In this document: one piece after another, positions 8,110-62,527 of the stretch
Layout of the letters: every line of letters begins with the position of its first letter
Numbering within the stretch: the stretch's first letter is position 1
Virus record (IMG/VR): IMGVR_UViG_3300028384_001500
Coordinates: 1 to 64,000 of that record
Length of the DNA stretch: 64,000 bases
Reading direction: 5' to 3' (one strand)
Notes under the pieces: model-generated
What the model was told of the DNA's origin: nothing
What the model saw: only the letters and a program-made list of their open reading frames with translations
Databases searched by the model: none
Translations under genes and position numbers: made by a program

Positions 8110-8697
8110 TCATGGTTTCAAAGCCTTCCTTATATCTTCAACTGAAAATCCTTTTCTTCCAGTGTTCATTTTTTGTTTTATAGTTTGTCTAATCATACCG
8201 ATAGTTTTGTCTTTTAATGTTGTATCTAATTTGACTATAGCTTCTCCAGCTTTTCTAACATCTGGATTATCACTTAAAGCAGCCAAACCGCCAATAGTTG
8301 CAAAATTTAATTTTGTTTTATTAGATCTAGGTTCACCATCAACTTTGTATTTAACTTTATCATCTGTGTCTAAGTAAAACTGGACTTCAGGTTTTTCGCC
8401 ATCCAGTTCAATTTCAAACTTTGCTTTTTCCCATTCAATGGAAGGTTCAGGTTCTTCAACCGGTTCTTCATCAGCAGGTTCTTCTTCGTTGTCACTACTT
8501 TCTGGGTTTGGATCAAAAGCTTCATCTCCAGAATCATCTGTTTCGGAAGAAGCACCTTCACCTTCTTCATCAAACATTTCATCGCCTGTACTGTCAGTTC
8601 CTTCTGCTGAGTCGTCTCCTTCTTCATCAAGCACTTCATCCTGTTCTAGTAGATAATTTTCAATAAGCTTTTTAAGTCGACTTTTAGAAATACGCAT
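8110..8697 (-). CDS. Acidic protein with basic N-terminal leader (putative virion internal protein)
   Basis: MRISKSRLKKLIENYLLEQ followed by a D/E-rich tract. Confidence 0.7.
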   Translation of the reverse strand: MRISKSRLKKLIENYLLEQDEVLDEEGDDSAEGTDSTGDEMFDEEGEGASSETDDSGDEAFDPNPESSDNEEEPADEEPVEEPEPSIEWEKAKFEIELDGEKPEVQFYLDTDDKVKYKVDGEPRSNKTKLNFATIGGLAALSDNPDVRKAGEAIVKLDTTLKDKTIGMIRQTIKQKMNTGRKGFSVEDIRKALKP

Positions 8698-8727
8698 TGC
8701 AATCCTCGCTATTAATAACTATTATTT

Positions 8728-8755
8728 AAAAAAGAAAAAAGCACCGAAGTGCCTT
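8728..8755 (-). terminator. Intrinsic terminator after rpsU
   Basis: AAGGCAC-TTCG-GTGCTTT hairpin followed by TTTCTTTTTT. Confidence 0.8.
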
Positions 8756-8758
8756 TAT

Positions 8759-12840: not shown

Positions 12841-13036
12841 TGCTTTCTCCTAATATGTCAAAATACCCCTCAGCAATTAAAACTGCAAAGTCTCCGTATT
12901 TAAGTTTGTTATTTCCTATTATAACCCATTTTTCTTTAGGGTTTATATGACCGATTACATTATCATCTTTGATTATTAAATTTTCTTTAATTTCGTAGTC
13001 ATAATAATTGCAGTAGTTCCTAAGATAAAAAAGCAC
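12830..13036 (-). CDS. Hypothetical protein
   Basis: Coupled small ORF. Confidence 0.55.
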   Translation of the reverse strand: MLFYLRNYCNYYDYEIKENLIIKDDNVIGHINPKEKWVIIGNNKLKYGDFAVLIAEGYFDILGESNGL

Positions 13037-13263
13037 TATTTTTTCCTTTGTTTGTTTTTAAACGCCTTACTTATTTTAACCGGTTCTTTTTCTTGTTGCA
13101 CATCTTCTTGCTTATTTTCAGGCCCTAGGTTCGGTGAAGGATAAGCTTTGAAGTAAACAGGGTGACCAACACCGTATCCGCGGCCACCTCTTACTTTAAG
13201 TACTTGATTTTCTTGTTCTAAGATCAGATCAATTATTTTCATTAACTGTCGTCTTTTGTCCAT
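13036..13263 (-). CDS. Small protein with leader-like N-terminus
   Basis: Start MDKRRQLMKIIDLILEQ at 13263 after AGGGG. Confidence 0.55.
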   Translation of the reverse strand: MDKRRQLMKIIDLILEQENQVLKVRGGRGYGVGHPVYFKAYPSPNLGPENKQEDVQQEKEPVKISKAFKNKQRKK

Positions 13264-14860: not shown

Positions 14861-14889
14861 ATTATACACTATTTATTTTCTTTTTACAC
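14861..14889 (-). promoter_or_regulatory. Class I promoter-like motif GTGTAA-N17-TATAAT
   Basis: Exact 17-nt spacer; GAGG RBS and the 14829 start lie downstream. Confidence 0.7.
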
Positions 14890-17800
14890 TTTTGCGCTTT
14901 TTACTTAATTTTCTTTCTATTAGTTTTTCAGACATATAAATCTTTTTTGGTTTTCTTGTTATTTTCTGTTTTTTCTCTGTAGCTTCCATGATGTCTTGGA
15001 GGATATTTTTAAAAAGTCGTGACTCAGCTGCTATTTTTGATGAATATTTACTAAATTCTTGAATTAATTTATTTTTTATATCTAATATTAGTTTTGTAAG
15101 TTCTCTATAAACAGGCAACGATATAGAACTTAAACCGTCAACAAACTTTAGTGTTGCTATTACGACGTTAAATATTTCTAATGTTTCTGTTCTTAAAAGA
15201 CTTTCTGGTAAAATACCAGGAAGTTCTCCTGTATACCGATCACCTAGTAACTGATCTGCCCATTCCGGAGGCGGTGTGTGATCTTCAGGCTTATGATGAT
15301 TTAAAGAGCTAACAAGATATCTTCTAAATTGCGCTGTAGTTCTAATAGATAAACACCCTAGCAAAGCTGCTCTAAGAGATTCTTCTGATTCATCGCCTGA
15401 TTCAAACACTGATTTTGTTGTGGCGGCAATAAAATTAGTGCACTGCATCATTCCATATTGATATATTTCTTCTGGGTTATTAAGATCTGCCCTAAATGGT
15501 CTCGGTTCTATACTTTGATAGTTTTCAGGAAAATTATCAAGTACAACGGATGCAAAACCTCTTGCTAGTCTTTTGATTGATGGCTCGTCGATATGAGCAG
15601 TATTCATTACAGATCTTATTTGTTCGCTAACTGAAGAGATTACTTGCAATGCTTGCCCGAATGTCTGTTCTTGACCAAAAAGAGTAGTGCCCTCACTGTC
15701 TTCAACAAAAGTTTTTGAACTTCCAGGCTTTTTAACTAAGCTTATAGTTCCTGAATTAGGACTATTAATTCTAGTTCTACTTGGTAAAGTGACAGGTTTA
15801 TATGGTGATAATGCATTAAATACACTTGCAGTATATACTTTTGCTAATGCGTTTACAAAGTCTGCTTCTTTTTGGTTTGATGATCTGACAATTTGACTGA
15901 CGTTTCCTGCGTTAACTGCTGGAAAAAATGTAGCAACTGTGGTTAATGCTGGATTACCTAGAAGACTACTAGTGCCTGACCAGTTGGTTGATTTTTTTTC
16001 GAAAAAATCTATCTTATCTTCCATTACAATCGCTCCAGTAGCATCAGTTACAACTTCACCATTCTCCGATAATTTTTGAACTCTAAACTTTTTAATAGAA
16101 GCTAACTCTAAATCATCTTTATTTGTAATTTTCCAAGTTATAACTTGATTACCACTGGTATCTAGGCTAATGTCTCTGCTTAAGGTAATTAAAGCCTCCT
16201 TAGACAGATAACATGTAAGTCCGGGAACAGACTCTGCTGTAGGCCTTGCTGATAAATCTTCAGCATAATTCTCGTAATACTTAGGATCGGCCTGCGCATT
16301 AATAGTCATACCTAAAATACAGTTTGACTTTATAAACGCTAAAAATTCAGTGAATTCTTCACTAGTGCCATCTAGATAAGGCATTAACCAAATTTTTAAT
16401 TTTGTTTCTAAAGTTGTTTTATCTCTTCTGGTTGTCTTTATTAAGTCTTGTTTATTTCTTTTATTCCCTTTTATTTCTACATTATTGGCATCAAACATTC
16501 TTATTTCACGCCCTTTTGAGTCATACACAGGGTCGTCATTCCCTATAAACCCTCTAAAACCGGAGATGGCGATAGTCGCTTTGTTATCTGAATATATTTT
16601 GTCGTCACCCGCAAATGGTATAATGTCATTAATGGAACTAATCTTATTTTGGCTAATTTCTAAAGTAGTCTTTTCTTCAGTGCTTAGTGTTCTCTGTTTT
16701 GCTGAAGATGTTGCATAATTAATAATAAATTCTGATAACTGATTTTGGCTACCTAGTATGTATGAAGGTTGATTACCTGCAGTGGTTTTGTTGCTATCCT
16801 TAGTAAGTGAGATTAATGTGCCTGCTTCAAGTTCAGCTTTTAGCTGGTTTATTACATTAGATGCTATCTTGTTGCTAAGCTCATTTACATAATCTTTTAA
16901 TTCTTCTATTCCAAGTGTATGTTTAAGTTCCTGGGCTGTAACAGACGGGTTTGTTCCTTCAAATAACCAGCTAGCATTCCAATGAGTACTACTTGGAGTA
17001 CTATCCGAAATATCTACAGCATGTAATAATTTTGCTCCAACGTCACTATGCGCAGTTAAGTTTATGTTTAATCTAATTACGTTAAGCGGGTTTTCCGAAG
17101 TGGTTCCAGCTCCAGATACGTCGCCAAATTCTCCAAATTCTGCTGTTGTTTTTGCAGGTGATTTTAAACCTCCAGTAGAAAAAGAGTAATTCATTGCTAA
17201 CTTCTTATCACCTAAGACAGCGTTAAACAAATCTATTACTTGACTAGCATCACCATAACCAGAAGAGTTTGGTCTTAGTAGTTGTGCAAATACTTTTATT
17301 ATTTTTAATCCTTCAAGTTTTGAATATATTTGATTACCTGTTGAACATTTACCGCTTAAGCAGACACCAGGTATTATAATCGTGTCGCCTTGAGAAGCTG
17401 CTTGAATTAATGCAGTAAGATTTAACTGGTGGGGAGGTTGATCACCTAAATACAGATCAACAGATGGCATATTACTAGGAAACACTCTTGAAGAATTTAA
17501 ATTATATGCATTACTATAAGTAGTGTTAGTAACAGAATCACTAAATTCCGGCAATATTACTTGGGAAGAAAACTGTTCATAAAAGTTTCCTATTGCCCCG
17601 GCGTTGGCGCTGATAATTGCTTCTAATATATACTTTTGGGCTTGACTAGAAGCAACAACAGATGGGTCTAAATAAAAAACTGGGTGCTGTATTGTTGTCT
17701 CTCTAACACTAACATTAGTTCCTGCAATACTCCTAGAATTAGGATCATCTATAATATCTTGTCCGCGCTCTCTCTCTGTCTGGGCTGCAGTGGTTGTTCC

Positions 17801-18112
17801 AGTTTTACTAGCATTATACGCAAGCAATGCAAAGTTTTTACCTCTCAAACCTAATAGATATCTTTCTAAACTAGCTGGATTGCCTAGCTTACTTACAATC
17901 TCTGGATTAATAATATTATTAAAAAACGTAGCAAAAACAGTCGACGCTGATGCAAACTCCTTTTTATCAATGACGACATCTTGACGCTTAACCATTTCAT
18001 GAAACTTAACTGCAGCATTGTATGTTGAGTCACTTTCATCAGGCGCAGGAGACTCGAGTAACATCTGCTCGAGCATTAATCGCAATCTTTTCTCTGATAT
18101 AATTGTTTTCAT
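14873..18112 (-). CDS. Large leader-bearing protein, 1079 aa (putative internal virion protein)
   Basis: MKTIISEKRLRLMLEQMLLES leader; no confident domain call. Confidence 0.75.
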   Translation of the reverse strand: MKTIISEKRLRLMLEQMLLESPAPDESDSTYNAAVKFHEMVKRQDVVIDKKEFASASTVFATFFNNIINPEIVSKLGNPASLERYLLGLRGKNFALLAYNASKTGTTTAAQTERERGQDIIDDPNSRSIAGTNVSVRETTIQHPVFYLDPSVVASSQAQKYILEAIISANAGAIGNFYEQFSSQVILPEFSDSVTNTTYSNAYNLNSSRVFPSNMPSVDLYLGDQPPHQLNLTALIQAASQGDTIIIPGVCLSGKCSTGNQIYSKLEGLKIIKVFAQLLRPNSSGYGDASQVIDLFNAVLGDKKLAMNYSFSTGGLKSPAKTTAEFGEFGDVSGAGTTSENPLNVIRLNINLTAHSDVGAKLLHAVDISDSTPSSTHWNASWLFEGTNPSVTAQELKHTLGIEELKDYVNELSNKIASNVINQLKAELEAGTLISLTKDSNKTTAGNQPSYILGSQNQLSEFIINYATSSAKQRTLSTEEKTTLEISQNKISSINDIIPFAGDDKIYSDNKATIAISGFRGFIGNDDPVYDSKGREIRMFDANNVEIKGNKRNKQDLIKTTRRDKTTLETKLKIWLMPYLDGTSEEFTEFLAFIKSNCILGMTINAQADPKYYENYAEDLSARPTAESVPGLTCYLSKEALITLSRDISLDTSGNQVITWKITNKDDLELASIKKFRVQKLSENGEVVTDATGAIVMEDKIDFFEKKSTNWSGTSSLLGNPALTTVATFFPAVNAGNVSQIVRSSNQKEADFVNALAKVYTASVFNALSPYKPVTLPSRTRINSPNSGTISLVKKPGSSKTFVEDSEGTTLFGQEQTFGQALQVISSVSEQIRSVMNTAHIDEPSIKRLARGFASVVLDNFPENYQSIEPRPFRADLNNPEEIYQYGMMQCTNFIAATTKSVFESGDESEESLRAALLGCLSIRTTAQFRRYLVSSLNHHKPEDHTPPPEWADQLLGDRYTGELPGILPESLLRTETLEIFNVVIATLKFVDGLSSISLPVYRELTKLILDIKNKLIQEFSKYSSKIAAESRLFKNILQDIMEATEKKQKITRKPKKIYMSEKLIERKLSKKRKSVKRK

Positions 18113-24109: not shown

Positions 24110-24529
24110 TTAAATGTAATCGTCTGTGTCTTCGTCTTCAAAGTCAAATATTTCTACATCGTCTTCGAAGTCGCTATTGAAGTTCATAGCACTGTCTGGT
24201 TCAGGTATATAATCAGGATCTTTCATGACACTATCAGGTGAAAGGGGGTCACCTTTTGAAAATGAATTAAAGTCATCCAAAAAGGAAGCATACATATCCA
24301 TATATTGATCGATGGACATTGTCTCTCCTGATATAGCATCATCAACTGTCATGACACCTGCTTCTTTAAACCCTTCTAATACTTCTACTAAGTCTTCTTC
24401 ATTTTTAACAACAGTTTCAGCACCGTCTTCTGATGTAATCATATACCCTACATGCGGTGATTTTTGAATGATTATATTTGCACCTGTTACAGCTTCAGTT
24501 AATAATCTTCTTAATATTTTTCTACTCAT
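24110..24529 (-). CDS. Leader-bearing acidic protein
   Basis: MSRKILRRLLTEA. Confidence 0.7.
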   Translation of the reverse strand: MSRKILRRLLTEAVTGANIIIQKSPHVGYMITSEDGAETVVKNEEDLVEVLEGFKEAGVMTVDDAISGETMSIDQYMDMYASFLDDFNSFSKGDPLSPDSVMKDPDYIPEPDSAMNFNSDFEDDVEIFDFEDEDTDDYI

Positions 24530-24579: not shown

Positions 24580-25050
24580 TTAAAAATATCTAATTGCAGG
24601 TACTGGATTTCTATAAATTGATGTTAAGTCTTCTATCTTATATGCACATGCATAATCTGCAATTGCTGTCATTAATAATTCAAAAAATTCCATAAAGTGA
24701 TCAGATAGTTCATCCATTTCTACTCCTAAGCTGAGAATATGATCTAGGTACAGTTGAAAGTCTGAGTAATTATCTTCAACCCAGCTTCCAAATGTCCTAA
24801 ATACTTCATCATATATTCTATCATAATGTGGATGAAACGGTTCACATCTACCTGGATTAGGATCTCTTCTAGGATCCCATCCTCCTCCGTTTCCGTCGTC
24901 ACCTCCGCCTCCGCCGCCGCCTCGTCTAGGCGGAATTACAGGTGGTATCTGACCTCCTCCAGCGCCGGCACCAAGATCGAAGTCTTGACCAAAAGTATCT
25001 CTAAATTCTTTCAATATTAATCTTCTAAGTTTTTTTCTATTTAATTTCAC
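24580..25050 (-). CDS. Leader-bearing protein with Gly/Pro linker
   Basis: MKLNRKKLRRLILKEFRD; N-terminus paralogous to 25821-26399. Confidence 0.7.
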   Translation of the reverse strand: MKLNRKKLRRLILKEFRDTFGQDFDLGAGAGGGQIPPVIPPRRGGGGGGGDDGNGGGWDPRRDPNPGRCEPFHPHYDRIYDEVFRTFGSWVEDNYSDFQLYLDHILSLGVEMDELSDHFMEFFELLMTAIADYACAYKIEDLTSIYRNPVPAIRYF

Positions 25051-25068: not shown

Positions 25069-25824
25069 TTATAATATTACTAGTTTTCCTCTTTCGAACA
25101 AAAAATGATATGAATCTTCCCAAAATACAACAGGTGGAAAATTACCAGCTGGACTTTGACCGTGGGTTAAGTTTTGTTCACCAATCCCACAGTCTTCTAC
25201 GTCGTATCTACTAACATATGTTTTATTTGCAATATTCATTATAGCAGTAACTACTTTATGACGAGCATCAACTTCAGAATCCATACCCATGTGATCATCA
25301 ATATCAGACTGGGTTATTTCTTTCTTTTTTGCTGCAACTCTAATCACCATGTTGTTAAGATCTTCGGGTTCTATTGCATAAGGCTGTGATCTATTATCTT
25401 TTGCCAAATAAAAGACCGGCCCATCCCAACCAGCGAGCACATAATTCAATTCTTTCCCCACAATGCTATTTAAAATACTAAAATCGCTCGAGGTTAAATA
25501 GTTTCCAATTTCTCCTATTCTTCTTGAAAATGCTTTATTATTAAAATCATTGATATCATCTACATAGTCTGAACCCTTGTAAGGTAATTCTTCGTAAGGA
25601 GCGCTATTGTCGTTTGGAAATACTAATTCATCTTGCTGAAGAGACGACGCTAGCTGATAGCCAGCCCTGCGATCTTCTTCGCTATCTGACGTCGTCAATT
25701 GTGAGGTCTTTTTTCTTATTTGAGGGGTGACGTGCATACTAGGATCCCTAGGCCACTTGTAATAATTGCTTCCGTAAATCGCTTCATTGATTAACTCTCT
25801 AAGCTTTCTTCTATTTAATTTCAT
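25069..25824 (-). CDS. Leader-bearing protein
   Basis: MKLNRRKLRELINEA. Confidence 0.7.
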   Translation of the reverse strand: MKLNRRKLRELINEAIYGSNYYKWPRDPSMHVTPQIRKKTSQLTTSDSEEDRRAGYQLASSLQQDELVFPNDNSAPYEELPYKGSDYVDDINDFNNKAFSRRIGEIGNYLTSSDFSILNSIVGKELNYVLAGWDGPVFYLAKDNRSQPYAIEPEDLNNMVIRVAAKKKEITQSDIDDHMGMDSEVDARHKVVTAIMNIANKTYVSRYDVEDCGIGEQNLTHGQSPAGNFPPVVFWEDSYHFLFERGKLVIL

Positions 25825-26399
25825 TTTCTTCCTACCTTTGTATAATAATCAATTAAAAATGCCCTACTATTTAGAAAATCTTCCATAGTAAAAGGATCCG
25901 GATCGCTTGCGCCTGAAGCTTCTAAATTATCCAAGTCATCTTGTATGTCTTCACTACTTTTATTTTTTACAGCTTTGGCAATTGCAACAATAATACTCAT
26001 AGCCTTATTTACATCCATGCCATTTAACACACTTACAAATTTTTGTCCGGCAATATGTATTATTTTATGTTCGCCCTTTCCATAATTAACAGCAATAGCA
26101 ACGCCTTCTTGCAGTGCATCGATAGTTAAACTCACATCAGGATCGATCATGTTTTTAACTACTTGCCGTTTAAAAGGAACTATTCCGTCGCTTCTAACAA
26201 AATGATGATATCCTATTCTTTTCAAACGACTGATAACTTCCATAGGCCAATCTTTTGGTCCTCCACCCTCATCATCGTCATCCAGAGGTGGTAAATCAGG
26301 AGGACCGCCACTGGTTAAATCTAGGTCACCAAAGTCTCCAGTAATATCTCTAAATTCTTTAAGAATTAATTTTTTAAGTTGTCTTCTTGTAATTTTCAC
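25821..26399 (-). CDS. Leader-bearing protein with Gly/Pro/Asp linker
   Basis: MKITRRQLKKLILKEFRD. Confidence 0.7.
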   Translation of the reverse strand: MKITRRQLKKLILKEFRDITGDFGDLDLTSGGPPDLPPLDDDDEGGGPKDWPMEVISRLKRIGYHHFVRSDGIVPFKRQVVKNMIDPDVSLTIDALQEGVAIAVNYGKGEHKIIHIAGQKFVSVLNGMDVNKAMSIIVAIAKAVKNKSSEDIQDDLDNLEASGASDPDPFTMEDFLNSRAFLIDYYTKVGRK

Positions 26400-26414: not shown

Positions 26415-28709
26415 TTAAATATTATGCAATACATCGTTATCTAAAGACCAAATACCTTCGCTAATTCTTGCCTTAATTTCATCAGCAATTTTTGTCTTAA
26501 TATCGTCAGGTACCGGTCGTGTAATTGTTTCTACAGATCCGTCAGCTCGATATCTTTTTATTTCTTGGGTTTTAAGTTCCATACTATTATACTTATCTAG
26601 TAAAAATTGATCATCACATTTTACTTTATTATATATGAATATATCGTGATATTCAAGAAAATGTTTCTTGAAATGCTGTATGGCTCTTTCAGAAATGTAG
26701 TTACTAGCTGCGATATAAGAGAGTAAACGTGCAAGAGGATTATCACCAGCAGAATTCGCATCATATTGTGCAAACTCCCCTGTTAGTAGAGGTTCAATAT
26801 AAATATCGATATCAGCTTGATGAGCATACTTAGATATCTTTTCTCTACCTTTAAGTCCTCCTTCGGGTTCGATAAATCTATAAAACTCTGATAAACTCAT
26901 TTGAAAAAACTCAGGAAAGTGTTCATCAATTGCATTTTCTAATTCTTGAATCATGACTGGCGTCTCTTGCCTTGTCATTCTATAGTAAACATTATGAGAA
27001 GGCAGCATTGATAATACTCTGATCATAAGTCCGGTAGCCAACCCATCTTCGTCAGTCATGCGAGGTAATGTTCTTCTCTTACCATCTGGCCCTCTAACAG
27101 GCAAAAAACCAAAGTCTACTAATCGACGCATAATTTTTAAAAAATAATTAAATCTATGTTCTATAACTTCTGTAAAAAATTTGCTTTTAAGTTCTTCATT
27201 TTGAGAACTGGTATATACACTTTCTACAGTTCTTAATCCTCTATAGTCACTATCATATTTTGATGATTTAGAGTTATCTATAATATTCTGCACTCCTTTT
27301 TCACTTAAGACGTCTGATTCGTATTTGTTAATCTCACTCGCAAAGTTAGGGTGTGGCGGAAAAATTAGATGCTGAACTTCCATAACTTCATCAACTAGTT
27401 CTTCAAAATAGTAATCAATATCATCCTCAGAAACGTTAGTTTTGCCTAATGTAAGTTGTGTATGAAGTACTAAATACTTTTGAAAAAAATCACCTGCTAA
27501 AAGGTGGCTTTGACGAATTAAAATAAAATTAACGATATCTTTTATTGCCCTTTTTGAGTTACTTTTAAAAGCATAGCTTTTATTTTCCTTAAATGCGTCA
27601 ATGGGGTTTGAAGAACTCGTAATTAGCCTATAAACTCTTTCAACAGTATCAAGAGTTATACCTGAATTCTCACCTTTAGGTTTTTTAATGCTATGCAGTA
27701 AAAAGATCGGATCATAAAAAAATATGAATTCAAAAACTTCTTGAGACTTTTCATAGCTTGATGCAGAAATCTGTTCAATGTAATCTCTTTTTTCGTCTTC
27801 ACCGTAATCCTTGATTACACTTTTTAAGTATAGTATATCTTGGCATGCTCTTTTAAATGACTCTTTTGCTGGGTGGTTACTACCTATTACTTGAGCTTCG
27901 GCTTTAAGTATCCCCATTATCTTGTCGTAATATTGGCCCAGGCCTGCCTCAGATCTTAAGTGGTGATCTTTTATTCCTTTGTTCGCCGCATCTACTGATA
28001 AACTACCATCTTGACCGGTAAGAGTAGGCGAACCATGAACAAATCCAATTGAAATACGTGAGTCGTTATTATCCATAAATGGTTCTTTTTGCACTTTAAA
28101 AGGATCGTCAGGAGTACGACTATAGTCCATAACATAAAAAAGAATAATGTCTTCTTTTTCTCTACCCACATAAGAAAGAAAAAGATTTTGACCTTTTGTT
28201 TTAGTTGTACACCAAGACGTGTCTTTACCACTAATATCGCATGCTGTAGATCCTTTGACAGTCTTTGGTAATAAAATAGTCCATGGGCCTACTTGATCGA
28301 TCTTTTCTACCTGATTCGGATCATCAATCGTTTTAACTGTTGGTTCTGGTTTGCTTTTCCTGCTATCAATTAAAGCGTCAACTTGCGATAACACCCTACG
28401 CAAATCATTAACCGTTTTATAATTTTTTTTAGATAAGTTAGTAGGATATCCGTTTTCTCTCACAATTGCTTGTACTTGAGGCTCAAAAAATCTAATGACG
28501 TCGGGGACAACGTCTTGGATAGGCTCTGTACCACGTGTTTTCTGAATCCAAGATAGTTTGTCAATCACAGTTAGCCCTTTATTATATGCATCGAGAAGAG
28601 GCGTTTGATCAGGTTTCGGCTGAGTTTTGATCCATTCTCTTGTTTTTCTACTCTCAAGCAGCAGGCTTTCTAATAAAATTTTTCTTAGTCTTCTTTTTGT
28701 TATTTTCAT
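26415..28709 (-). CDS. Leader-bearing WCT-domain protein, paralog 1
   Basis: MKITKRRLRKILLESLLLE; GPWTILLP..CDISGKDTSWCTTK..NLFLSYVG. Confidence 0.78.
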   Translation of the reverse strand: MKITKRRLRKILLESLLLESRKTREWIKTQPKPDQTPLLDAYNKGLTVIDKLSWIQKTRGTEPIQDVVPDVIRFFEPQVQAIVRENGYPTNLSKKNYKTVNDLRRVLSQVDALIDSRKSKPEPTVKTIDDPNQVEKIDQVGPWTILLPKTVKGSTACDISGKDTSWCTTKTKGQNLFLSYVGREKEDIILFYVMDYSRTPDDPFKVQKEPFMDNNDSRISIGFVHGSPTLTGQDGSLSVDAANKGIKDHHLRSEAGLGQYYDKIMGILKAEAQVIGSNHPAKESFKRACQDILYLKSVIKDYGEDEKRDYIEQISASSYEKSQEVFEFIFFYDPIFLLHSIKKPKGENSGITLDTVERVYRLITSSSNPIDAFKENKSYAFKSNSKRAIKDIVNFILIRQSHLLAGDFFQKYLVLHTQLTLGKTNVSEDDIDYYFEELVDEVMEVQHLIFPPHPNFASEINKYESDVLSEKGVQNIIDNSKSSKYDSDYRGLRTVESVYTSSQNEELKSKFFTEVIEHRFNYFLKIMRRLVDFGFLPVRGPDGKRRTLPRMTDEDGLATGLMIRVLSMLPSHNVYYRMTRQETPVMIQELENAIDEHFPEFFQMSLSEFYRFIEPEGGLKGREKISKYAHQADIDIYIEPLLTGEFAQYDANSAGDNPLARLLSYIAASNYISERAIQHFKKHFLEYHDIFIYNKVKCDDQFLLDKYNSMELKTQEIKRYRADGSVETITRPVPDDIKTKIADEIKARISEGIWSLDNDVLHNI

Positions 28710-31000
28710 TAGTATCCGTCCATTTCAATATTAAGCTCTTCCAATATTTCTGTTCCTAGTGTCCAAGTGCTAGGATAAGCATAGAATGCTCTGTCTTCTA
28801 TCTCTGCATACACAAGATCTCCAAAATAGGTTTTGTCTTCGATTGTTCTTGTATACTGTGTGTCTGGTAGTTGTGGACCTTCTGACGCTGAATAGTACCT
28901 TAATACTCTATAAAGGTCAACTAGATATTGATCGCTTGAATACTTAGGATTTCTTAAAAAACCGTCAAAGTCAACACACATATTGTTTTTTATATAGTTT
29001 GCCATTTTTTCTGAAATAAAAGGACTGCCTATTAAAAATCTTATTAATTCATCAAAAAATGTTATTTCTCTAGAGGGAGTCCAACGATTTTGGCCAAACC
29101 CAGTAAGCCAACCCAAGTCTGAATCTTTAACATATGTGCTAATCATTAAACTGTTTATTCCTCTATTTCCTCCCTTAATAAAACTTTTAAATTGACTAGG
29201 CTTCATTTGATAAAATTCAGGAAATATCGATACAAAATAGTTTTCAACATCCTGGATTAACTTTTGCTGCATTCCTCTAGCATTTTCAATAAAGGCTCCT
29301 CTTCCACCAACCAATTCTTGCCGCACGATAGTTATCGCAATTCCGTCTTTTTGGTCTAACAAAGGAATATCCAACCCTTCAAATCCACCATATTCGGTAA
29401 ATTTACTGCGACCTTTATCTATTAGATATCGAAAAGATTTTAAGACATGTTCATATCTGGTAGAGACTCCTGACTCATAAAATTTTTCTTTTATATTATC
29501 TGAAGCTATATTGTAAATCCCTCTAATTTGATTTTGCTTACCTTGATCGATAAAATCTTGTATACCTTCATCTGATAATTGGTAAGTATGTCTTTCATGT
29601 ATTTTTTGAGCAATCTTAGGGTGGTATTGAAAACCTCTATGGTGTCCGTAAGATAATATATTTTCAACTAGATCATTCATTCTAACTGATGGGTCAATAA
29701 CTGTTCCTCGACTCATTTGACCTGTGCTAATTAATTTCTCATCAAGTAACTCGTTGTATAGATCAAAGAACTTATCAAACATGACGTCACTCATAAGGTA
29801 GCTTTTAAAAGTCAACACGTCAAAAATAAGCATGTCACTAGAATATCTTGAGCCACCTTGATATTGTGCAAATATTTTGCCCAAAGCAAGTCTTTTTGTT
29901 GAGAATTCATTATATATTTTTTCTAAGGTATCTTTCGAAAAATTCACAGTTTGGTAGCCTTCGCCTCTAGCTCTAATTACATCATAAAAAGTATCTGGTG
30001 TAGAAAACAAAATAAATTCCACAACTTCTGGGGATGCCTCATTTAAATTTGCTGCCACCTGATTAAGGTAGTCATTCTTTGCATCCTTATCATAGTCTTT
30101 GATTATATTTTTTAAATACAGTAAGTCTTTTCTAGCTCGTTTAATAGACTCTTTAGCAGGGTGATTTGAGCCAATAGTCGTAGCTTCAGCTGTTAAAATT
30201 GACATAATTTGATCGTAATACTGTCCTAGGCCATTATTTGAGCTAAGTATTCTTTTGTTTAGACCCATGTTTGCTGCATCAACTGACAAACCCCCACTTT
30301 GACCGTCAAGTACAGGGCTGCCATTCATAAACCCAATGCACATTCGACTGTCATTGTTTGCCATGCAAGCTTCTTTTCTGACTTTGTGAGGATCATCTGG
30401 GGTGCGACTGTAATCCATGATATAGAAAAGAATAATATCAGCATTTTCTCTGCCTACATAAGAGAGAAATAGATTTTGCCCACGAGATTTTGTTGTGCAC
30501 CAAGTTGTATCTTTTCCACTAATATCACAAGACACAGAACCAGTTACAGTTCTGGGCATTAAGATTGTCCATGGGCCTACTTCGGCTATCTTGTCAACAT
30601 GGCTAGGATCATCAATAGGATTTGTTTGTTGCGTTGATGTAGCTGCTTTTCTGCTATCAATAAGCGTATCTACTTGTCTAATTACTCTACGCAATTCTCC
30701 CACAGTTGGGTAAGTTCTTCTATTTAAGTTAGTCTGATATCCGTTTTCTTTTACAATTGCCTGTACTTGCGGCTCAAAAAATCTAACGACGTCTGGTACT
30801 ACATCTTGGATAGGCTCTGTGCCTCTGACCTTTTGAATCCAAGATAATTTATCAACAACTGTTAGCCCTTTATTGTAACCGTCAAGTAGTGCTTCTTGAT
30901 CGGGTTTAGGCTGAGTCTTGATCCATTCTCTTGTTTTTCTACTCTCAAGCAATAAACTTTCCCATAAAATTTTTCTAAGTCTTTTCTTTGTAATCTTCAT
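28709..31000 (-). CDS. Leader-bearing WCT-domain protein, paralog 2
   Basis: First ~300 aa clearly similar to paralog 1; C-terminal half divergent. Confidence 0.78.
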   Translation of the reverse strand: MKITKKRLRKILWESLLLESRKTREWIKTQPKPDQEALLDGYNKGLTVVDKLSWIQKVRGTEPIQDVVPDVVRFFEPQVQAIVKENGYQTNLNRRTYPTVGELRRVIRQVDTLIDSRKAATSTQQTNPIDDPSHVDKIAEVGPWTILMPRTVTGSVSCDISGKDTTWCTTKSRGQNLFLSYVGRENADIILFYIMDYSRTPDDPHKVRKEACMANNDSRMCIGFMNGSPVLDGQSGGLSVDAANMGLNKRILSSNNGLGQYYDQIMSILTAEATTIGSNHPAKESIKRARKDLLYLKNIIKDYDKDAKNDYLNQVAANLNEASPEVVEFILFSTPDTFYDVIRARGEGYQTVNFSKDTLEKIYNEFSTKRLALGKIFAQYQGGSRYSSDMLIFDVLTFKSYLMSDVMFDKFFDLYNELLDEKLISTGQMSRGTVIDPSVRMNDLVENILSYGHHRGFQYHPKIAQKIHERHTYQLSDEGIQDFIDQGKQNQIRGIYNIASDNIKEKFYESGVSTRYEHVLKSFRYLIDKGRSKFTEYGGFEGLDIPLLDQKDGIAITIVRQELVGGRGAFIENARGMQQKLIQDVENYFVSIFPEFYQMKPSQFKSFIKGGNRGINSLMISTYVKDSDLGWLTGFGQNRWTPSREITFFDELIRFLIGSPFISEKMANYIKNNMCVDFDGFLRNPKYSSDQYLVDLYRVLRYYSASEGPQLPDTQYTRTIEDKTYFGDLVYAEIEDRAFYAYPSTWTLGTEILEELNIEMDGY

Positions 31001-38492: not shown

Positions 38493-38792
38493 ATGAATAA
38501 ACACCTTTATGTAATACAATCAGATGTAACAGGCGCAATAAAAATAGGTATGAGTAAAAACCCTCAAAGCAGATTACGACAGTTACAAACCGGTTCACCG
38601 TACAAACTTAAACTACTAACCATAGTAAAAGGCAAAGGGAGCTTAGAAAAGTCTCTGCATGAATCTCTAAAACCTTATAAACAGTCTTGCAAGGGAGAAT
38701 GGTTTGATTTTGAATGTACGGGCTCTTTTCCAATTTGGTTAAGCGAAATGGTCGACTGGGACATTGCAAATGTTTGGTGGGATAAAAGTTAA
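38493..38792 (+). CDS. GIY-YIG nuclease (T5orf172/MUG113-like)
   Basis: LYVIQ..IKIGMSKNPQSRLRQLQTGSP..EKSLH..GEWF. Confidence 0.85.
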   Translation: MNKHLYVIQSDVTGAIKIGMSKNPQSRLRQLQTGSPYKLKLLTIVKGKGSLEKSLHESLKPYKQSCKGEWFDFECTGSFPIWLSEMVDWDIANVWWDKS

Positions 38793-40181: not shown

Positions 40182-41129
40182 TTATTTGACAATGTCTGCA
40201 CTAGCTAAATGACCGTTAACAACAATTAATTTACCTTTTATGTAGTTATCAAACCATTTTGCAACTTCTGATACTTTTTGCTTTAAATTCTTAAGATACT
40301 CAACTTCATAGTCAGTTAACCCAGCAATATTAAGTCTTAATCCATTTTTTGTTAAAAGTTCTTGACAAACCATTTCTGCTAGATCATCATTTAAAAAATA
40401 ATTTCTATATTGCTCTTGTTGATGAGGTACTGGACCTTTTCTTTGGGTTATTGCGCTTTTCATCGTAAGAATGTCGATTACTCGCTTACTAAAACCCGGG
40501 CTAGTATTTTGTAAATTTCCTATATCATGACCTAGCTTTGTAAGCTTATTTCTCATTAATTCACTATCAAAAATAGCATGCATTATCATCCAAGGCGTCA
40601 TTTGAAACTTGTGATTTCCAATATTAATAAAGTCTGTTTGATAATAAATAATGCAATCGTTGTCCTCTATTGTCGATAAATCAATATCAGGTTTGACTTT
40701 TTTAAGAAAGTTTTTTGCACTTTGATTTAAAGGCGATATTTTTAATCGACTGTCAAAGTTACCTCTTTGCCTACCAACAAACTTATTAAACTGACTTTTT
40801 GAGATTGTCCCGTTTTTAAAACAAAATGATCCAATCTGAGCAAGAACGCATACTTTTGCGTTCATGTACCCGAATCTTTTTTCTGCTTCTTTGTTAAATG
40901 AACTGCCTTTCGCGTAAACTGACGCTGCTTTTTTTTGTTTGTTCATTCTTTTAATTGCACCTGGATCAAATACCGGCCTTTCGTAGTCACCTAGAAATTC
41001 ATAATTGTCTGTTGCAGCTATCTTATTAAAAGAAGAAAATTGATCATCAGCAGAATCGACAGTCCCTAGATTTTTTTTAAACGCCATTTCTCTTATTATT
41101 TGTCGTAGCTGTCTTCTAGTTATTTTCAT
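40182..41129 (-). CDS. Leader-bearing protein
   Basis: MKITRRQLRQIIREM. Confidence 0.72.
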   Translation of the reverse strand: MKITRRQLRQIIREMAFKKNLGTVDSADDQFSSFNKIAATDNYEFLGDYERPVFDPGAIKRMNKQKKAASVYAKGSSFNKEAEKRFGYMNAKVCVLAQIGSFCFKNGTISKSQFNKFVGRQRGNFDSRLKISPLNQSAKNFLKKVKPDIDLSTIEDNDCIIYYQTDFINIGNHKFQMTPWMIMHAIFDSELMRNKLTKLGHDIGNLQNTSPGFSKRVIDILTMKSAITQRKGPVPHQQEQYRNYFLNDDLAEMVCQELLTKNGLRLNIAGLTDYEVEYLKNLKQKVSEVAKWFDNYIKGKLIVVNGHLASADIVK

Positions 41130-41704: not shown

Positions 41705-42472
41705 TTATCTTGCACAAAAATAAAATGTTGCAAATCCTTCGTAGTAATCATAAATAAACAGTCTACCATCAACGTTGATAGAGACAAATTTATTATCTAG
41801 CTCTTTCGGGTAATGATCAGATGTAGGAAAAGAAACATTTTTATTACTAAAAAAGTAGTCATGAAGTGCTGTAAAGAGTGGATTAAAATCATCATCCCAC
41901 ACTTCTGTTAGTGAGTCTATCACACCCATATCTTCTATTTCACACCCTAAAAATTCTGAGTATACACGAAATTCGTCACCCATACCATCATAATCATTAT
42001 TTTCTAGTGTCATTTCTGGCATCTCGCCTACAATAGAAAATACATCACCATATGTGTTTCTTAAAAAGTTACAATACGTCTTATTTTTTGACAGCTTAAC
42101 AAACTGTTCTGGATCGATATCATTAAATTCTGGTACCAAACTATCTTGGGCTTTTGATCTTATGCCTAGTGAGTCAACAGCAGTCTCCTCAGCAGGTGTC
42201 AAAGGGTTATCGTAATCAAGGTCTGGGTGCCTAACGGCTAACTCACGCCCCATCTTTCTATACGAAGCATTATTAGGTCCGTATGTGTCTACTCCACTTG
42301 AGCCTTTCATTAAAGATGATAATTTTGGGTCCAATCCTGCAATTTGATCGTCTTTTTTGCGACCTAATTCATATGCGACATCAGAAGGAGTAGCTACTCC
42401 TTCTGGGTCAACTATGTAAGTGCGTGCTGCTTCTATTATTAGTTGCCTTAATTGTCTTCTTGTTATTTTCAT
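41705..42472 (-). CDS. Leader-bearing protein inserted in the signalling cluster
   Basis: MKITRRQLRQLIIEA. Confidence 0.72.
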   Translation of the reverse strand: MKITRRQLRQLIIEAARTYIVDPEGVATPSDVAYELGRKKDDQIAGLDPKLSSLMKGSSGVDTYGPNNASYRKMGRELAVRHPDLDYDNPLTPAEETAVDSLGIRSKAQDSLVPEFNDIDPEQFVKLSKNKTYCNFLRNTYGDVFSIVGEMPEMTLENNDYDGMGDEFRVYSEFLGCEIEDMGVIDSLTEVWDDDFNPLFTALHDYFFSNKNVSFPTSDHYPKELDNKFVSINVDGRLFIYDYYEGFATFYFCAR

Positions 42473-52557: not shown

Positions 52558-52577
52558 AAATAATTTAGCTATTAAAA

Positions 52578-52991
52578 TTAGTTAATAGTAATTTTTTTAG
52601 CTGCCGGTTTTTTACTTTCATATGTAGGTACAAGAATAGAAAGCACGCCTGATGTATAATCAGCATCGACGTTATCAATATCGACATTTTTAGGCAAAGA
52701 AAAAGATCGTTTAAATTTTGTTGTCTGAATATGCTCTTGATGAATATATTCTTTTCCTTCAAAATCTAACGTACCTTTAACTGTTAAAATATTATTTTCG
52801 ATGTTAATATCGAAGTTGTCACGTGAAAAGCCGGGTAAAAATAAATCAAAGACGTAAGAATTGTCTTGTTTGTAAATATTACATTTTGTATTGAAACTGT
52901 TAGCATGCGACTGCTTACCGCGGCTTTTTCCAATTCCAAAGTAATCATCATTAAAAAAATCATTTAAATAAGAATTATAAATTAGACTCAT
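52578..52991 (-). CDS. Hsp20/alpha-crystallin small heat-shock protein
   Basis: LPGF..DINIENNILTVKG, FKRSFSLP, ADYTSGVLSI. Confidence 0.9.
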   Translation of the reverse strand: MSLIYNSYLNDFFNDDYFGIGKSRGKQSHANSFNTKCNIYKQDNSYVFDLFLPGFSRDNFDINIENNILTVKGTLDFEGKEYIHQEHIQTTKFKRSFSLPKNVDIDNVDADYTSGVLSILVPTYESKKPAAKKITIN

Positions 52992-57575: not shown

Positions 57576-58430
57576 TTAAATAGAAACAATATTTTCAGCT
57601 TTTAGCTTCTCAAATATTTTTAAATATATTTTTTTAACAGACTCTACACCTTCGCCTTCCGGGTCAGAGCGCCACAATTGAATTGCTGATGTTAACATGT
57701 TTTTAATTATAGTTTCGTCCCAGCCAGGTATATCTTTTCCTTTTTCAGCTGCCCTATACAAACTATTAAAGTTGTTAATTCTATCATAATTAAACGCTTC
57801 AATCACACTGTTCACGTATCTTTGATTTGAAACTGCAGCATCTTCTAAATTACCCAAAAGAAATTGTGCTAGTCTGATTTCATTTTTACTAAGTGAACCA
57901 TAGCCGGATGATGCTGACATGTAACTTCCTGCTGCTCGAGGCCTGGTCAAGGAAATTCCATTATCTCTCAACGATCGGTTAATCTCACGCACATATTTTG
58001 TATATTCTCGATCAAATTTTTGATCGTTTTCTTTGTTTTCTCTATCATCAATCGGTTCAGCTCTTTGCAAACCTTTTCTATAATCCCTATATAGATTATT
58101 AAAAAGTCTATTTAGTTCTTGCATTGCATTGCAAAATGTTTCGATCCCAAATTGAGGTGCCACTAACATGTTCATAAAAGGTAGCGCTGCATCTGTAAAT
58201 GCTGATATAAACACAGGATTCATCCAGTCAGGTTTGCTGTCATCATTACCGCCACCATACGCCGGTATTTTCCCACCGGACTTAACAATTTCTATAATTT
58301 GCAAAAATTCATCATCAAAATTAAAATTGCAACGCGCGATTTTAACTTCGTAATTGCCTCTATTTTTATATCTTTCTTGCAAAAGATAATTTTCAATGAT
58401 TAAATTTAACTCTTTTTTTGTAACTTTCAT
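57576..58430 (-). CDS. Leader-bearing protein
   Basis: MKVTKKELNLIIENYLLQE. Confidence 0.72.
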   Translation of the reverse strand: MKVTKKELNLIIENYLLQERYKNRGNYEVKIARCNFNFDDEFLQIIEIVKSGGKIPAYGGGNDDSKPDWMNPVFISAFTDAALPFMNMLVAPQFGIETFCNAMQELNRLFNNLYRDYRKGLQRAEPIDDRENKENDQKFDREYTKYVREINRSLRDNGISLTRPRAAGSYMSASSGYGSLSKNEIRLAQFLLGNLEDAAVSNQRYVNSVIEAFNYDRINNFNSLYRAAEKGKDIPGWDETIIKNMLTSAIQLWRSDPEGEGVESVKKIYLKIFEKLKAENIVSI

Positions 58431-59128
58431 TATATTCTCTTCATCAACCTTTGGACTTTTCTTCTTATCTCTTGCAGGTTTTGTTGCTCATTAACTTTAA
58501 TTGGAGGGCTGCTATCTTCAGCTGAACCTTTTGGCTTAGACTGAGGCAAGTTAGATTCTTCCTCTTCTTCAGGCAGTTCTTCGTCCTCTTCATTCTCAGC
58601 TCCTTTCATAATAATATCAGCGTACAAAGGTGCATCACTAGGGTCAAGAGCATTTTCGCCTTCCAAGGCTCCTTGGAGTATGCTGGACAATTCTCTTAAA
58701 AATAAGTGCAAAATTTTTCTTTCATCTTCATCTAGGCGATCATAATATGTTAATAATTCATCTTTAATCTCTTTGTCTTTTGTAGATCTTCCAGCTCTAA
58801 GATTGTTAATGTCTTTAAGTACACTATCAAAAGACACTCCAAATTGTTCTGCATCAACTTCTTCTTCTACTTCGTCGTCAACAGGCGCTTCTTCGGTATC
58901 ACTAGTTGTTTCTTCGGTATCTACTTCGCCATCATCAGCAGGTTCAGCTTCTTCTTGCTCAGAAAGGCTTACGCCATAAAAGCTTTCGCTGGCTTTTAAG
59001 TTTGACGCATATGCGCTATGAGCAGGATCTGCAGATTCAAATAAACTTTTTTTTGTTTTTATAACTGCTTCTTCTGAAATAATCTTTAATAAGCTCATAA
59101 GCTCTTTTTCTGAATTTACTTTAATCAT
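58430..59128 (-). CDS. Leader-bearing acidic protein
   Basis: MIKVNSEKELMSLLKIISEE; LFE, LSE and VNE segments. Confidence 0.7.
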   Translation of the reverse strand: MIKVNSEKELMSLLKIISEEAVIKTKKSLFESADPAHSAYASNLKASESFYGVSLSEQEEAEPADDGEVDTEETTSDTEEAPVDDEVEEEVDAEQFGVSFDSVLKDINNLRAGRSTKDKEIKDELLTYYDRLDEDERKILHLFLRELSSILQGALEGENALDPSDAPLYADIIMKGAENEEDEELPEEEEESNLPQSKPKGSAEDSSPPIKVNEQQNLQEIRRKVQRLMKRI

Positions 59129-59475
59129 TATGCACCTCTTTGTTTTATAACTATCTTACAAGATATTAAGTTTTCTTCTGGGTTTTGACTGAATTCCTTA
59201 ATTTCTAATACACCTTCACCTTTTAAAAAATAATTATTATCAACAACGATTGCGTGTTTTATATTTAAATTGTTAGCATTAAATAACATACTGATATTAC
59301 TGCTTATTTCAATAACAAAAGTATGTAAATTATTTTCTTTTTTATAACTTCTGACAAAATATTCTTCTTTGTTAGTCTTGTATTCTAAAAGCAAAAATAT
59401 ATCTTTTCCAGAACTCTCTATTAAGTCTTCTTCTGATATTACACTTTTTAAATTGTCGCTTACAAAAAATGACAT
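59128..59475 (-). CDS. Hypothetical protein
   Basis: Coupled ORF. Confidence 0.6.
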   Translation of the reverse strand: MSFFVSDNLKSVISEEDLIESSGKDIFLLLEYKTNKEEYFVRSYKKENNLHTFVIEISSNISMLFNANNLNIKHAIVVDNNYFLKGEGVLEIKEFSQNPEENLISCKIVIKQRGA

Positions 59476-59855
59476 TAATATCTACCTAATCGAATTACTT
59501 GTATATCTTCAATAATTTCATCAATTTTTTTAGACATTTTTATATCTACGTCAGAAACATCATTCATGTTCATTGTAAATAACTTAATGCTTACTTCTGT
59601 GTTAAAAATATTAATATTAGGGTGGTGATTTAGCTTATTTGCCAAAAATAGCACTTCGTCTAAAAAATAACTTAATAATTTAATATCGTCAAACTTATAC
59701 GATCTAAATAAAAAATTTTTTTCATTATCAGACTTAATTTCCCATCCTGGATCGCTTACGTTAACCGGCATTTCGTCAACAAAATTTTGATTAATTTGCT
59801 CGAATATTTGCCCTTTGTACCTATTATTGATTGCATTCATTAACAACCTGTTCAT
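59475..59855 (-). CDS. phhB: Pterin-4-alpha-carbinolamine dehydratase-like protein
   Basis: GWEI..LFRSYKF..ANKLNHHP..EVSIKLFT..VSDVDI. Confidence 0.75.
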   Translation of the reverse strand: MNRLLMNAINNRYKGQIFEQINQNFVDEMPVNVSDPGWEIKSDNEKNFLFRSYKFDDIKLLSYFLDEVLFLANKLNHHPNINIFNTEVSIKLFTMNMNDVSDVDIKMSKKIDEIIEDIQVIRLGRY

Positions 59856-62527
59856 TAAATACCTACCTGTCTCATTCTTCTACTGTCAGCAGCAAATTGC
59901 ATAAAGTCTTTATATCCCTTCATAAACATTTTTGCCATCTCTTTTTCATTTTCAATAATTTTGTCAACCTCATCAACAAAGTACTCGCTTAAATCAGCAC
60001 CCTCCATTGTTTCATCCATTTGTGATTCTAAGTCAAGCCATATATTGCGCGCTTCAATTGCAATCTCTGCATAAGCTTCTGGTGTAATGTCAGCTTTTAT
60101 TAGTGCTTTAGCAGCTTTGTTTTTATTATTAAAGTCAGGATCACCTTTAAGCCCAGTAAAGTACTCAACAACGCTATTTAATTCTTTTTCTGAAAGGTCA
60201 GATTTAACTTCTGGATTATTCTTCTTTCTTATTTGATTAATTATACCTTTGATCTCTTCTGACCACTGAAGTGAAAATTCAGCAACTAATTTATCTAACG
60301 GGTAGCTCCCAACATTTCTAATAATAGCGCCTCCTGTTGTTTGCAAAAACTCTGTTTCTTCAGCAAGTACTTGATAATCAATATCATATTCATCCATAAA
60401 TTGTACAATCGCTTCAATCTCAGGCAGAATCTCATTTTTAATACGGTGTAAAAGTTTTGCCTCATCAACTTGCTTAAGCTTGTTCTTTTTATCATCGTAG
60501 TTTCTTGTTTTTAATCTTCCTTTTTGCGCTTTCTTTTCTAAGTCAGGTACAACAACGTTTTTAATTGCTATAGCTAGCTGCTTAATTATTAGCTCCATAT
60601 TTTGATTAAAGAGATCGTTAATCGATCCTCGCATAACCTCACCGGTGTCAGGATCTTCATATTTGTAAGTAAATAAATCTACTTTTGGCTGTATCTTTTT
60701 CAAGTACCACTGTCTTATACCTGCTTCGCCAGAAAATCCAAAGTAAGGAAACAAATCACGCCAGTCAAAAGGTTGACCTTCAGCAATTAGTTTTGCGTAC
60801 CTTTCAAGCTTTTTGACGTATTTTTCTTCTTCTGTCATGTTTTTGCTAGGCACTTCCTCTACTTTAGTACTATCTTGGCTTTCTTCAGGTGGGCTAGTTT
60901 TTTGTTGTTCTCTTGCTAAATCAAAGGCTCCTGCTACGTGACCGTCAGAAAAACCTTTTGCTTCTTCTGCAGTTACTAGAACGGTTGTGTCCGCATCTCT
61001 AAATTCAAATTCATCGGCAGATTTTTTAAATTTAGACTCGACAAATTCAAAAAACATTGCTTTGAAATCTTCTTCAGCGTCGACATTAACGTTACCAATG
61101 AAGTGTGTTTGGTTTAAAAACTTTTTGTCTTCGTCTTCAGACATAGGAATGGTTTTTACCCAGCTAGAAAATGCCTTCGTTAAAACATTATCTATAATAG
61201 CTTCTGCACTGTCAAATCTTGTGGAAACACCGTAGTTTGCATAGTCAGCAGCAATTGCTTCAGAAACTTTTTGAATAAATATATTTAGCGGATCGCCGAC
61301 TTGATTTGCAAAGCCGGTTAACATCCTTCCAATATGTTTTTTCGTTGCAGCGAGTTTGTTTAAAATTCCAAATATTCTCTGATACACAATCATTAAAAGA
61401 TCTTGAATCTTTTGGTCTCGTTTTACCGGATCTTTAATGTTGTTGACAGCAGCAAACATGGATTTAACTTTAATTGGATTTAAAACAGTGTTTGGTGTAA
61501 TTCCAAACTCGTGTGTAAGTGGTTTAAGTAGTGCACCAAATTCTTTTTTAAGATCCGGATTCATTAACTCGTTTGTAAATTCAGCGTCAATTTGCTTAAA
61601 GAAAAGCTGCAATTCATCATGCGAATCATAAACGGCCTTTTCAAAAGGAGACAAGTCTTCGTAATTTTTTCCCATTGTTTCTTCGATTCCGGTTCTAGTC
61701 AAATATTGTTGATAAGATCGGTACCTTGGCATGCCTTCGCCTCTCATTGCAGGGTCTTCATCAACTCCGGCTTCTTTTGGGAAAAGTGGTCTAAGGCTTT
61801 CGCGATCAATTTCCTGAACGCCTGTTGATACATCTGTACCGGCTGTGTATCCTGCAACAAAATCAGCTGATTGTGATTCGACATATTTATCATGTTCTTC
61901 TAATTCATCCTCTGATTTTCCTTCGACTTCAAAATCTGCAGCAAAATCATAGCCTCGCATATATTCATCTTTATTCGACGCAGATTCGTAACCTGGCAAG
62001 TCTTCTGGACCTAGGTCAGAAGGTAGTGCCTCAATTGTTTTTTCTGTGCCTCTTTTCTTTTTTCTAACGCGAATTCCTGATTGATTAGAAATAGATTCTG
62101 CTATAAGATCAAAATCAGATATTTTTGTTTTCTTAGAGATGCTAAATCCTTCAAAGAGTGTATTAGTGTCTTCCTCTCTATCGATTGCTTCATCTAAGAT
62201 TACGTGAAGTTTTCTGTAAAAAAATTCTACTTGTGATATAGGCACTTCTTTACATATGACAGATGCTGCAGCGCATAATTCATTGATTGTACCGGGCACA
62301 TATTCTTCATCCTCGACAGGAGGTGTTTCAATAGACAACTGGGTTGCCATATGTGATGATGGTTTAATTGGATTATCTTCCTCGTAAAAACCAAAGGGGT
62401 CAGAGTTTGGAGACTGGACGTTAAAAGGGTGAATCATTCTACCACCTGTCCCATCATTACCTCTATTTTCATTTAGGCGCTTTTTTAATATATTAAAAAG
62501 AACACTTTTTTTAACAGCAACTTTCAT
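59855..62527 (-). CDS. Large leader-bearing protein, 890 aa
   Basis: MKVAVKKSVLFNILKKRLNE; acidic and helical. Confidence 0.75.
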   Translation of the reverse strand: MKVAVKKSVLFNILKKRLNENRGNDGTGGRMIHPFNVQSPNSDPFGFYEEDNPIKPSSHMATQLSIETPPVEDEEYVPGTINELCAAASVICKEVPISQVEFFYRKLHVILDEAIDREEDTNTLFEGFSISKKTKISDFDLIAESISNQSGIRVRKKKRGTEKTIEALPSDLGPEDLPGYESASNKDEYMRGYDFAADFEVEGKSEDELEEHDKYVESQSADFVAGYTAGTDVSTGVQEIDRESLRPLFPKEAGVDEDPAMRGEGMPRYRSYQQYLTRTGIEETMGKNYEDLSPFEKAVYDSHDELQLFFKQIDAEFTNELMNPDLKKEFGALLKPLTHEFGITPNTVLNPIKVKSMFAAVNNIKDPVKRDQKIQDLLMIVYQRIFGILNKLAATKKHIGRMLTGFANQVGDPLNIFIQKVSEAIAADYANYGVSTRFDSAEAIIDNVLTKAFSSWVKTIPMSEDEDKKFLNQTHFIGNVNVDAEEDFKAMFFEFVESKFKKSADEFEFRDADTTVLVTAEEAKGFSDGHVAGAFDLAREQQKTSPPEESQDSTKVEEVPSKNMTEEEKYVKKLERYAKLIAEGQPFDWRDLFPYFGFSGEAGIRQWYLKKIQPKVDLFTYKYEDPDTGEVMRGSINDLFNQNMELIIKQLAIAIKNVVVPDLEKKAQKGRLKTRNYDDKKNKLKQVDEAKLLHRIKNEILPEIEAIVQFMDEYDIDYQVLAEETEFLQTTGGAIIRNVGSYPLDKLVAEFSLQWSEEIKGIINQIRKKNNPEVKSDLSEKELNSVVEYFTGLKGDPDFNNKNKAAKALIKADITPEAYAEIAIEARNIWLDLESQMDETMEGADLSEYFVDEVDKIIENEKEMAKMFMKGYKDFMQFAADSRRMRQVGI

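What the first reader, a model, noticed from the sequence alone, without database searches (positions are those of the whole stretch)
8110..62527. About 20 unrelated proteins share a basic amphipathic N-terminal leader ending at (I/L)xE: candidate capsid-targeting and maturation signal
Seen: MKITRRQLRRLIxE-like leaders start the genes at 8697, 13263, 18112, 24529, 25050, 25824, 26399, 28709, 31000, 33493, 34493, 35292, 35837, 38428, 39460, 40168, 41129, 42472, 58430, 59128 and 62527; downstream sequences are mostly unrelated. Similar segments end the proteins at 10672 and 18657. The leader has no hydrophobic core, so it is not a Sec signal. Established: T4 internal proteins carry a 10-aa capsid-targeting sequence removed by prohead protease after Glu in (I/L)xE. 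Inference: a portable tag loads a large, swappable protein cargo (kinase-like, HAD phosphatase, WCT proteins) into the head for injection, and near-identical leader DNA may allow cassette shuffling.
Basis: partly seen in the sequence, partly recalled or inferred. Interest (0 to 1): 0.85.

Follow-up and report, generated by a model that had tools for sequence, protein, structure and literature searches.

The report
Shared capsid-address tag on phage proteins
About one gene in six of this 236-kb marine T4-like jumbo phage starts with the same 14-residue basic helix ending in (I/L)-x-Glu, most likely an address tag that loads a large, fast-changing set of proteins into the phage head and is then cut off by the head protease.

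Summary
In the window, 15 genes start with a strong MKIT(R/K)RQLR(R/K)(L/I)I-x-E leader, 4 with a weaker version and 2 are doubtful. All are at N-termini on the coding strand (15 hits against 0.1 expected).

The window is bases 1-64000 of a 236,652-bp uncultured marine phage contig. I walked it to 155.8 kb. About 30 of 177 ORFs carry the leader.

The same contig has a T4-type head module: portal, gp21-like S77 protease, acidic scaffold and gp23-like capsid protein. Two small head-module proteins have leader-like N-termini. An ~11-kb block rich in leader genes lies between the capsid gene and gp13.

Across 114 leader proteins from more than 20 contigs, Glu is at residue 14 in 76%, and I/L sits two residues before the first Glu in 108 of 113. 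That is the T4 gp21 cleavage motif. Downstream parts fall into 95 unrelated clusters, almost all without Pfam domains.

One cargo family (HAD nucleotidase) occurs with this leader, with a second leader type, or with none.

Best reading: a T4 capsid-targeting-sequence analogue with a different tag and about ten times more cargo. Packaging and cleavage are inferred, not shown. The leader DNA is not near-identical.

The parts
8110..8697 (-). Leader gene, 195 aa, MRISKSRLKKLIEN; very acidic mature part (pI 4.1)
13036..13263 (-). Weak leader gene, 75 aa, MDKRRQLMKIIDLILEQE
   Evidence: below matrix threshold
14873..18112 (-). Weak leader gene, 1079 aa, MKTIISEKRLRLMLEQ
   Evidence: BLOSUM 19; no Pfam/PHROG family
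24110..24529 (-). Shortened leader gene, 139 aa, MSRKILRRLLTE; acidic
   Evidence: (score 12.8)
24580..25050 (-). Leader gene, 156 aa, (V)KLNRKKLRRLILKE, Gly/Pro-rich
   Evidence: homologue in L020
25069..25824 (-). Leader gene, 251 aa, MKLNRRKLRELINE
25821..26399 (-). Leader gene, 192 aa, (V)KITRRQLKKLILKE
26415..28709 (-). Leader gene, 764 aa, MKITKRRLRKILLE; first of three tandem paralogues
28709..31000 (-). Leader gene, 763 aa, MKITKKRLRKILWE; paralogue
31004..33493 (-). Leader gene, 829 aa, (V)KIKKENLSLLIEY; paralogue. It starts 1 nt after the stop of the conserved 188-aa gene 33495-34061
34122..34493 (-). Leader gene, 123 aa, (V)KITKRQIKKILLNE, followed by a hydrophobic segment
34858..35292 (-). 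Leader gene, 144 aa, (L)IKITRRQLRRLIAE; best match to the consensus
35289..35837 (-). Leader gene, 182 aa, MKITRNILRRLIE
37157..38428 (-). Weak leader gene, 423 aa, (L)ANLKNIIRGLIRE
   Evidence: BLOSUM 14; phrog_4301 of unknown function
38789..39460 (-). Leader gene, 223 aa: leader + ~10-residue linker + HAD 5'(3')-deoxyribonucleotidase core
   Evidence: AF2: helix 4-14, coil 15-19, core pLDDT above 93
39473..40168 (-). Leader gene, 231 aa, MKISKNKIKRMIKK...KE; basic
40182..41129 (-). Leader gene, 315 aa, MKITRRQLRQIIRE; all 9 homologues keep a leader; fold unassigned
41705..42472 (-). Leader gene, 255 aa, MKITRRQLRQLIIE; acidic
57576..58430 (-). Leader gene, 284 aa, MKVTKKELNLIIENYL subtype
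58430..59128 (-). Doubtful leader, 232 aa; has a basic amphipathic C-terminal tail instead
59855..62527 (-). Doubtful leader, 890 aa
   Evidence: BLOSUM 11
52565..52621 (-). Orphan 18-codon ORF that is almost only a leader (MKVKNRQLKKLLLTNFNS*), overlapping another ORF out of frame; possible scar of a lost cassette
   Evidence: similar orphan leaders in L012/L013, L026, L028

Best explanation
The leader is a capsid (prohead-core) targeting propeptide of a T4-type head-assembly system.

Proposed mechanism:
1. The 14-residue basic amphipathic helix (net charge mostly +3 to +7) docks the tagged protein onto the strongly acidic scaffolding core while the prohead forms.
2. The gp21-type serine protease then cuts after the Glu of the (I/L)-x-E that ends the tag. 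This frees the mature protein inside the head.
3. The mature protein is carried in the head and probably ejected into the host with the DNA.

Because the tag is short and independent of the fold behind it, the phage lineage can add it to, or remove it from, almost any gene. That would explain a large and rapidly changing cargo set.

Shown:
- the tag, its position, its boundary at Glu14 and its portability;
- the T4-type head genes in the same genome;
- leader-like N-termini on two head-module proteins.

Inferred: binding to the core, cleavage, packaging and injection.
For: 1. Same genome. The window is bases 1-64000 of a 236,652-bp contig. At 147-156 kb the contig has portal, an S77 protease (phrog_207 E 3.7e-53; T4 gp21 structure 5jbl E 8e-18), a 494-aa scaffold (pI 4.4, net charge -51) and a gp23-type capsid protein (phrog_138 E 6.3e-74). 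It also has T4 gp13, gp15, sheath and baseplate genes.

2. Leader on head-module proteins. The 183-aa and 69-aa proteins between protease and scaffold have leader-like N-termini (BLOSUM 26 and 37; the genome-wide score distribution falls off below about 22). In ten relatives the equivalent protein starts M-AK(V/L)(T/K)RxxLKxL(V/I)KECLVEIL-EG.

3. Location. About 11 kb containing about ten leader genes lies between the capsid gene and gp13 on the same strand. In relatives L204 and L199 these two genes are separated by at most one ORF.

4. Cleavage motif. In 114 distinct leader proteins, Glu is at residue 14 in 76% and the first Glu falls at residues 13-15 in 93%. P3 is I or L in 108 of 113, and conservation collapses after residue 14-16. 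Glu14 was not part of the search matrix. T4 gp21 cuts after L/I-X-E, and T4 internal proteins carry 10-19-residue N-terminal targeting propeptides (PMC9026906).

5. Portability. The HAD nucleotidase core occurs with this tag, with a second tag type, or starting directly at the catalytic motif. AF2 gives a separate helix 4-14, a coil, then a confident core.

6. Cargo.
- 110 mature parts fall into 95 clusters.
- Only 2 of 47 leader proteins from other contigs have a Pfam family.
- At 64-146 kb of this contig, 0 of 14 leader ORFs have a Pfam family against 29 of 72 other genes (p = 0.002).
- Recognisable cargo of the second tag type includes a Zeta-toxin-type kinase, an RNase T exonuclease and a weak ADP-ribosyltransferase hit. 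This resembles injected effectors such as T4 Alt.

7. Other lineages. The cultured relative Flavobacterium phage immuto (also S77 protease and gp23) has four unrelated proteins sharing a different ~24-residue N-terminus that also ends in (I/L)xE.
Against: - No virion proteome, N-terminal sequence or expression timing exists. No cultured phage carries this tag.
- The tag has no sequence similarity to the T4 CTS, and the head-module proteins show no detectable homology to T4 gp67 or gp68.
- The window phage's own 183-aa head protein matches the narrow matrix poorly (-7). The resemblance there is one of pattern.
- Some tagged proteins are not obvious capsid cargo: the HAD deoxyribonucleotidase, and an 834-aa protein inside the replication module.
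- At least one leader gene (35837) has an extended -10-like TGTATAAT upstream, as many enzyme genes here do. The promoter analysis was inconclusive.
- (I/L)xE is a short motif that is easy to find in any amphipathic helix.
- About 30 cargo species, several of them over 750 aa, is a lot even for a jumbo head.
Confidence: 0.6

Rival explanations
1. The leader is a membrane- or surface-binding amphipathic helix that holds many phage proteins at the inner membrane or another anionic surface. It has no link to the capsid.
For: It is a short basic amphipathic helix. One cargo (34493) has a hydrophobic segment. Leader genes are scattered among non-structural genes.
Against: It does not explain the conserved Glu14 with I/L at P3, nor the sharp end of conservation there. 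It does not explain the leader-like N-termini of proteins placed between prohead protease and scaffold in every relative. It does not explain the block of leader genes between capsid gene and gp13.
Confidence: 0.1
2. The leader is an N-terminal degradation or chaperone signal, for example for a ClpXP-type protease (the phage encodes ClpP) or the phage GroEL. It would time the lifetime or folding of these proteins.
For: The phage encodes ClpP and GroEL. In relative L015, leader genes are inserted in the ClpP-amidase interval. From my own knowledge, Met-basic-hydrophobic N-termini resemble one class of ClpX recognition motif.
Against: There is no reason for such a signal on proteins of the head module, or for an (I/L)xE boundary. 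The same enzyme core works with no leader in other phages. The adjacency to ClpP is seen in one relative only.
Confidence: 0.06
3. The leader addresses proteins to another phage-built compartment or complex, working like the encapsulation peptides of bacterial microcompartments, rather than to the capsid.
For: The format is the same as known encapsulation peptides: an N-terminal amphipathic helix plus linker on unrelated enzymes (the comparison is from my own knowledge). Tagged enzymes such as the HAD nucleotidase would fit a reaction compartment better than a capsid.
Against: No shell-protein family appears among the Pfam hits recorded for the called genes in the 1-146 kb I walked, though 81 kb remain unseen. 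The only compartment-building genes found are the T4-type head genes. The (I/L)xE end matches the head protease.
Confidence: 0.1
4. The conserved start is a nucleic-acid-level feature (translation initiation enhancer or regulatory site), or a Sec/Tat export signal.
For: A-rich first codons; the TRRxL stretch resembles the twin-arginine core.
Against: Synonymous codons vary freely while the amino acids are kept, and the upstream DNA is not conserved. There is no hydrophobic core or AxA site, and Arg is often replaced by Lys.
Confidence: 0.02

Closest known systems
[quoted passage not shown]
   Same: Short N-terminal propeptide shared by otherwise unrelated proteins. T4-type prohead with gp21-family protease, scaffold core and gp23 capsid protein in the same genome. 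The tag ends at (L/I)-x-E. Cargo content varies between relatives (PMC9026906).
   Different: Unrelated tag sequence: 14 residues and strongly basic, against the 10-residue T4 CTS. About 30 tagged genes in the 156 kb seen, against 3-4 in T4. Cargo reaches 829 aa among the clear leaders (1079 aa for a weak one) and is mostly acidic, against small basic T4 internal proteins. Tagged genes are spread over the genome and also sit inside the head/neck gene block. Nothing has been shown experimentally.
Ejection and inner-body proteins of phiKZ-like giant phages (phiKZ, 201phi2-1, SPN3US)
   Same: Jumbo heads carrying dozens of different internal proteins, with propeptides removed by a diverged gp21-type protease after Glu (PMC9026906).
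   Different: The cleavage motif there is S/A-X-E, not I/L-X-E. As far as I know, no single shared N-terminal tag has been described for them. The phage here has a canonical T4-type head module, not the phiKZ type.
Encapsulation peptides of bacterial microcompartments (PduD, PduP, EutC N-termini)
   Same: N-terminal amphipathic helix of about 15-18 residues plus a linker. It is portable between unrelated enzymes and binds the inside of a protein shell (own knowledge; format matched).
   Different: Those peptides are not removed by a protease and target BMC shells. No BMC shell gene was seen here.
Polyvalent proteins and MuF-type polymorphic toxins of phages
   Same: Effector domains (ADP-ribosyltransferase, Zeta-toxin kinase, nucleases) thought to be delivered together with the phage DNA. 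Similar domains appear among tagged cargo.
   Different: Those use a large fused carrier domain or one giant multi-domain protein. Here each effector is a separate gene with a 14-residue tag.

Membership tests
T4-type CTS / internal-protein system | The phage builds a T4-type prohead: gp20 portal, gp21 (Peptidase S77) protease, acidic scaffold core, gp23 capsid protein | tested here: met
   Same contig, 147-156 kb: phrog_207 3.7e-53, phrog_138 6.3e-74; 5jbl 8e-18. Relatives: (Portal_T4, Peptidase_S77, Gp23).
T4-type CTS / internal-protein system | A short N-terminal propeptide shared by proteins that are otherwise unrelated | tested here: met
   (95 clusters among 110 mature parts)
T4-type CTS / internal-protein system | The propeptide ends at a gp21 site, (L/I)-X-Glu | tested here: met
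   Met at the sequence level only: Glu14 in 76%, P3 = I/L in 108 of 113. Actual cleavage is not testable here.
T4-type CTS / internal-protein system | Sequence similarity to the T4 CTS, or homology of the core proteins to gp67/gp68 | tested here: not met
   hhalign of the head-core family against T4 gp67 and gp68: probability below 1%. The tag differs from the T4 CTS, which I know only from memory.
T4-type CTS / internal-protein system | Tagged proteins are present in virions, processed, and ejected; the tag is sufficient to package a foreign protein | not testable with these tools
   No cultured phage with this tag and no proteome found
Tat or Sec signal peptide | Hydrophobic core after the basic region, and a signal-peptidase site | tested here: not met
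   Charged or polar residues follow the leader directly
phiKZ-type head propeptides | Cleavage motif S/A-X-Glu | tested here: not met
   P3 is I/L, not S/A (motif from PMC9026906)
Bacterial-microcompartment encapsulation peptide | BMC shell proteins encoded with the tagged enzymes | tested here: inconclusive
   No BMC family among the recorded Pfam hits for 1-146 kb of the contig. The last 81 kb were not seen.

The most novel reading that the evidence does not exclude
Marine T4-like jumbo phages use a 14-residue address code to load 30 or more different, mostly unknown and rapidly exchanged proteins into the head. Around one sixth of their genes, and about a third of the bases of this window, would then be a pre-made injected arsenal, far beyond anything known for T4-type heads. 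The tag alone would allow such effectors to be mined from viromes. A still more novel reading that is not excluded: the tag addresses a different, undescribed phage compartment.
Probability: 0.45. Interest if true: 0.85.

Novelty: new variant of a known kind. Interest (0 to 1): 0.72.

Why it matters
If the tag is a capsid address, three things follow.

1. It marks, by sequence alone, the proteins that an abundant group of uncultured marine phages delivers into the host at the moment of infection. These are the likeliest anti-defence and host-takeover factors, and almost all of them are currently unannotated.
2. It shows that the T4 CTS principle is general. Different lineages would use different tags, all ending at the protease site.
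3. The principle can scale from 3-4 cargo proteins to dozens.

A short natural packaging tag with a matching protease is also a practical tool for loading proteins into phage heads in laboratory strains.

Tried and rejected
- **Searches that found nothing.** Nucleotide and protein searches against 50,697 cultured-phage records, with a 4.5-kb window stretch (19188-23675) and four leader proteins, gave nothing usable: no match and one irrelevant weak hit. Pfam and PHROGs on the 20 longer window leader proteins gave only the HAD hit and one PHROG of unknown function. The ESM Atlas gave no function for the 764-aa and 1079-aa cargo. The AF2 model of the 315-aa cargo (pLDDT 70) had no PDB fold match. 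No paper holds the leader string, and none describes such arrays.
- **A scan that failed.** The head module was instead reached by walking the contig.
- **Nucleic-acid signal: rejected** by synonymous codon variation.
- **Sec/Tat signal: rejected** for lack of a hydrophobic core.
- **Homology of the head-core proteins to T4 gp67/gp68:** not detectable.
- **Promoter analysis.** TATAAT-like elements are common upstream of many genes. A possible AGTATAG element occurs upstream of a few. There are too few cases to assign timing.
- **C-terminal tails:** three examples only, no class could be defined.
- **Leader DNA as a recombination substrate:** identity is too low.

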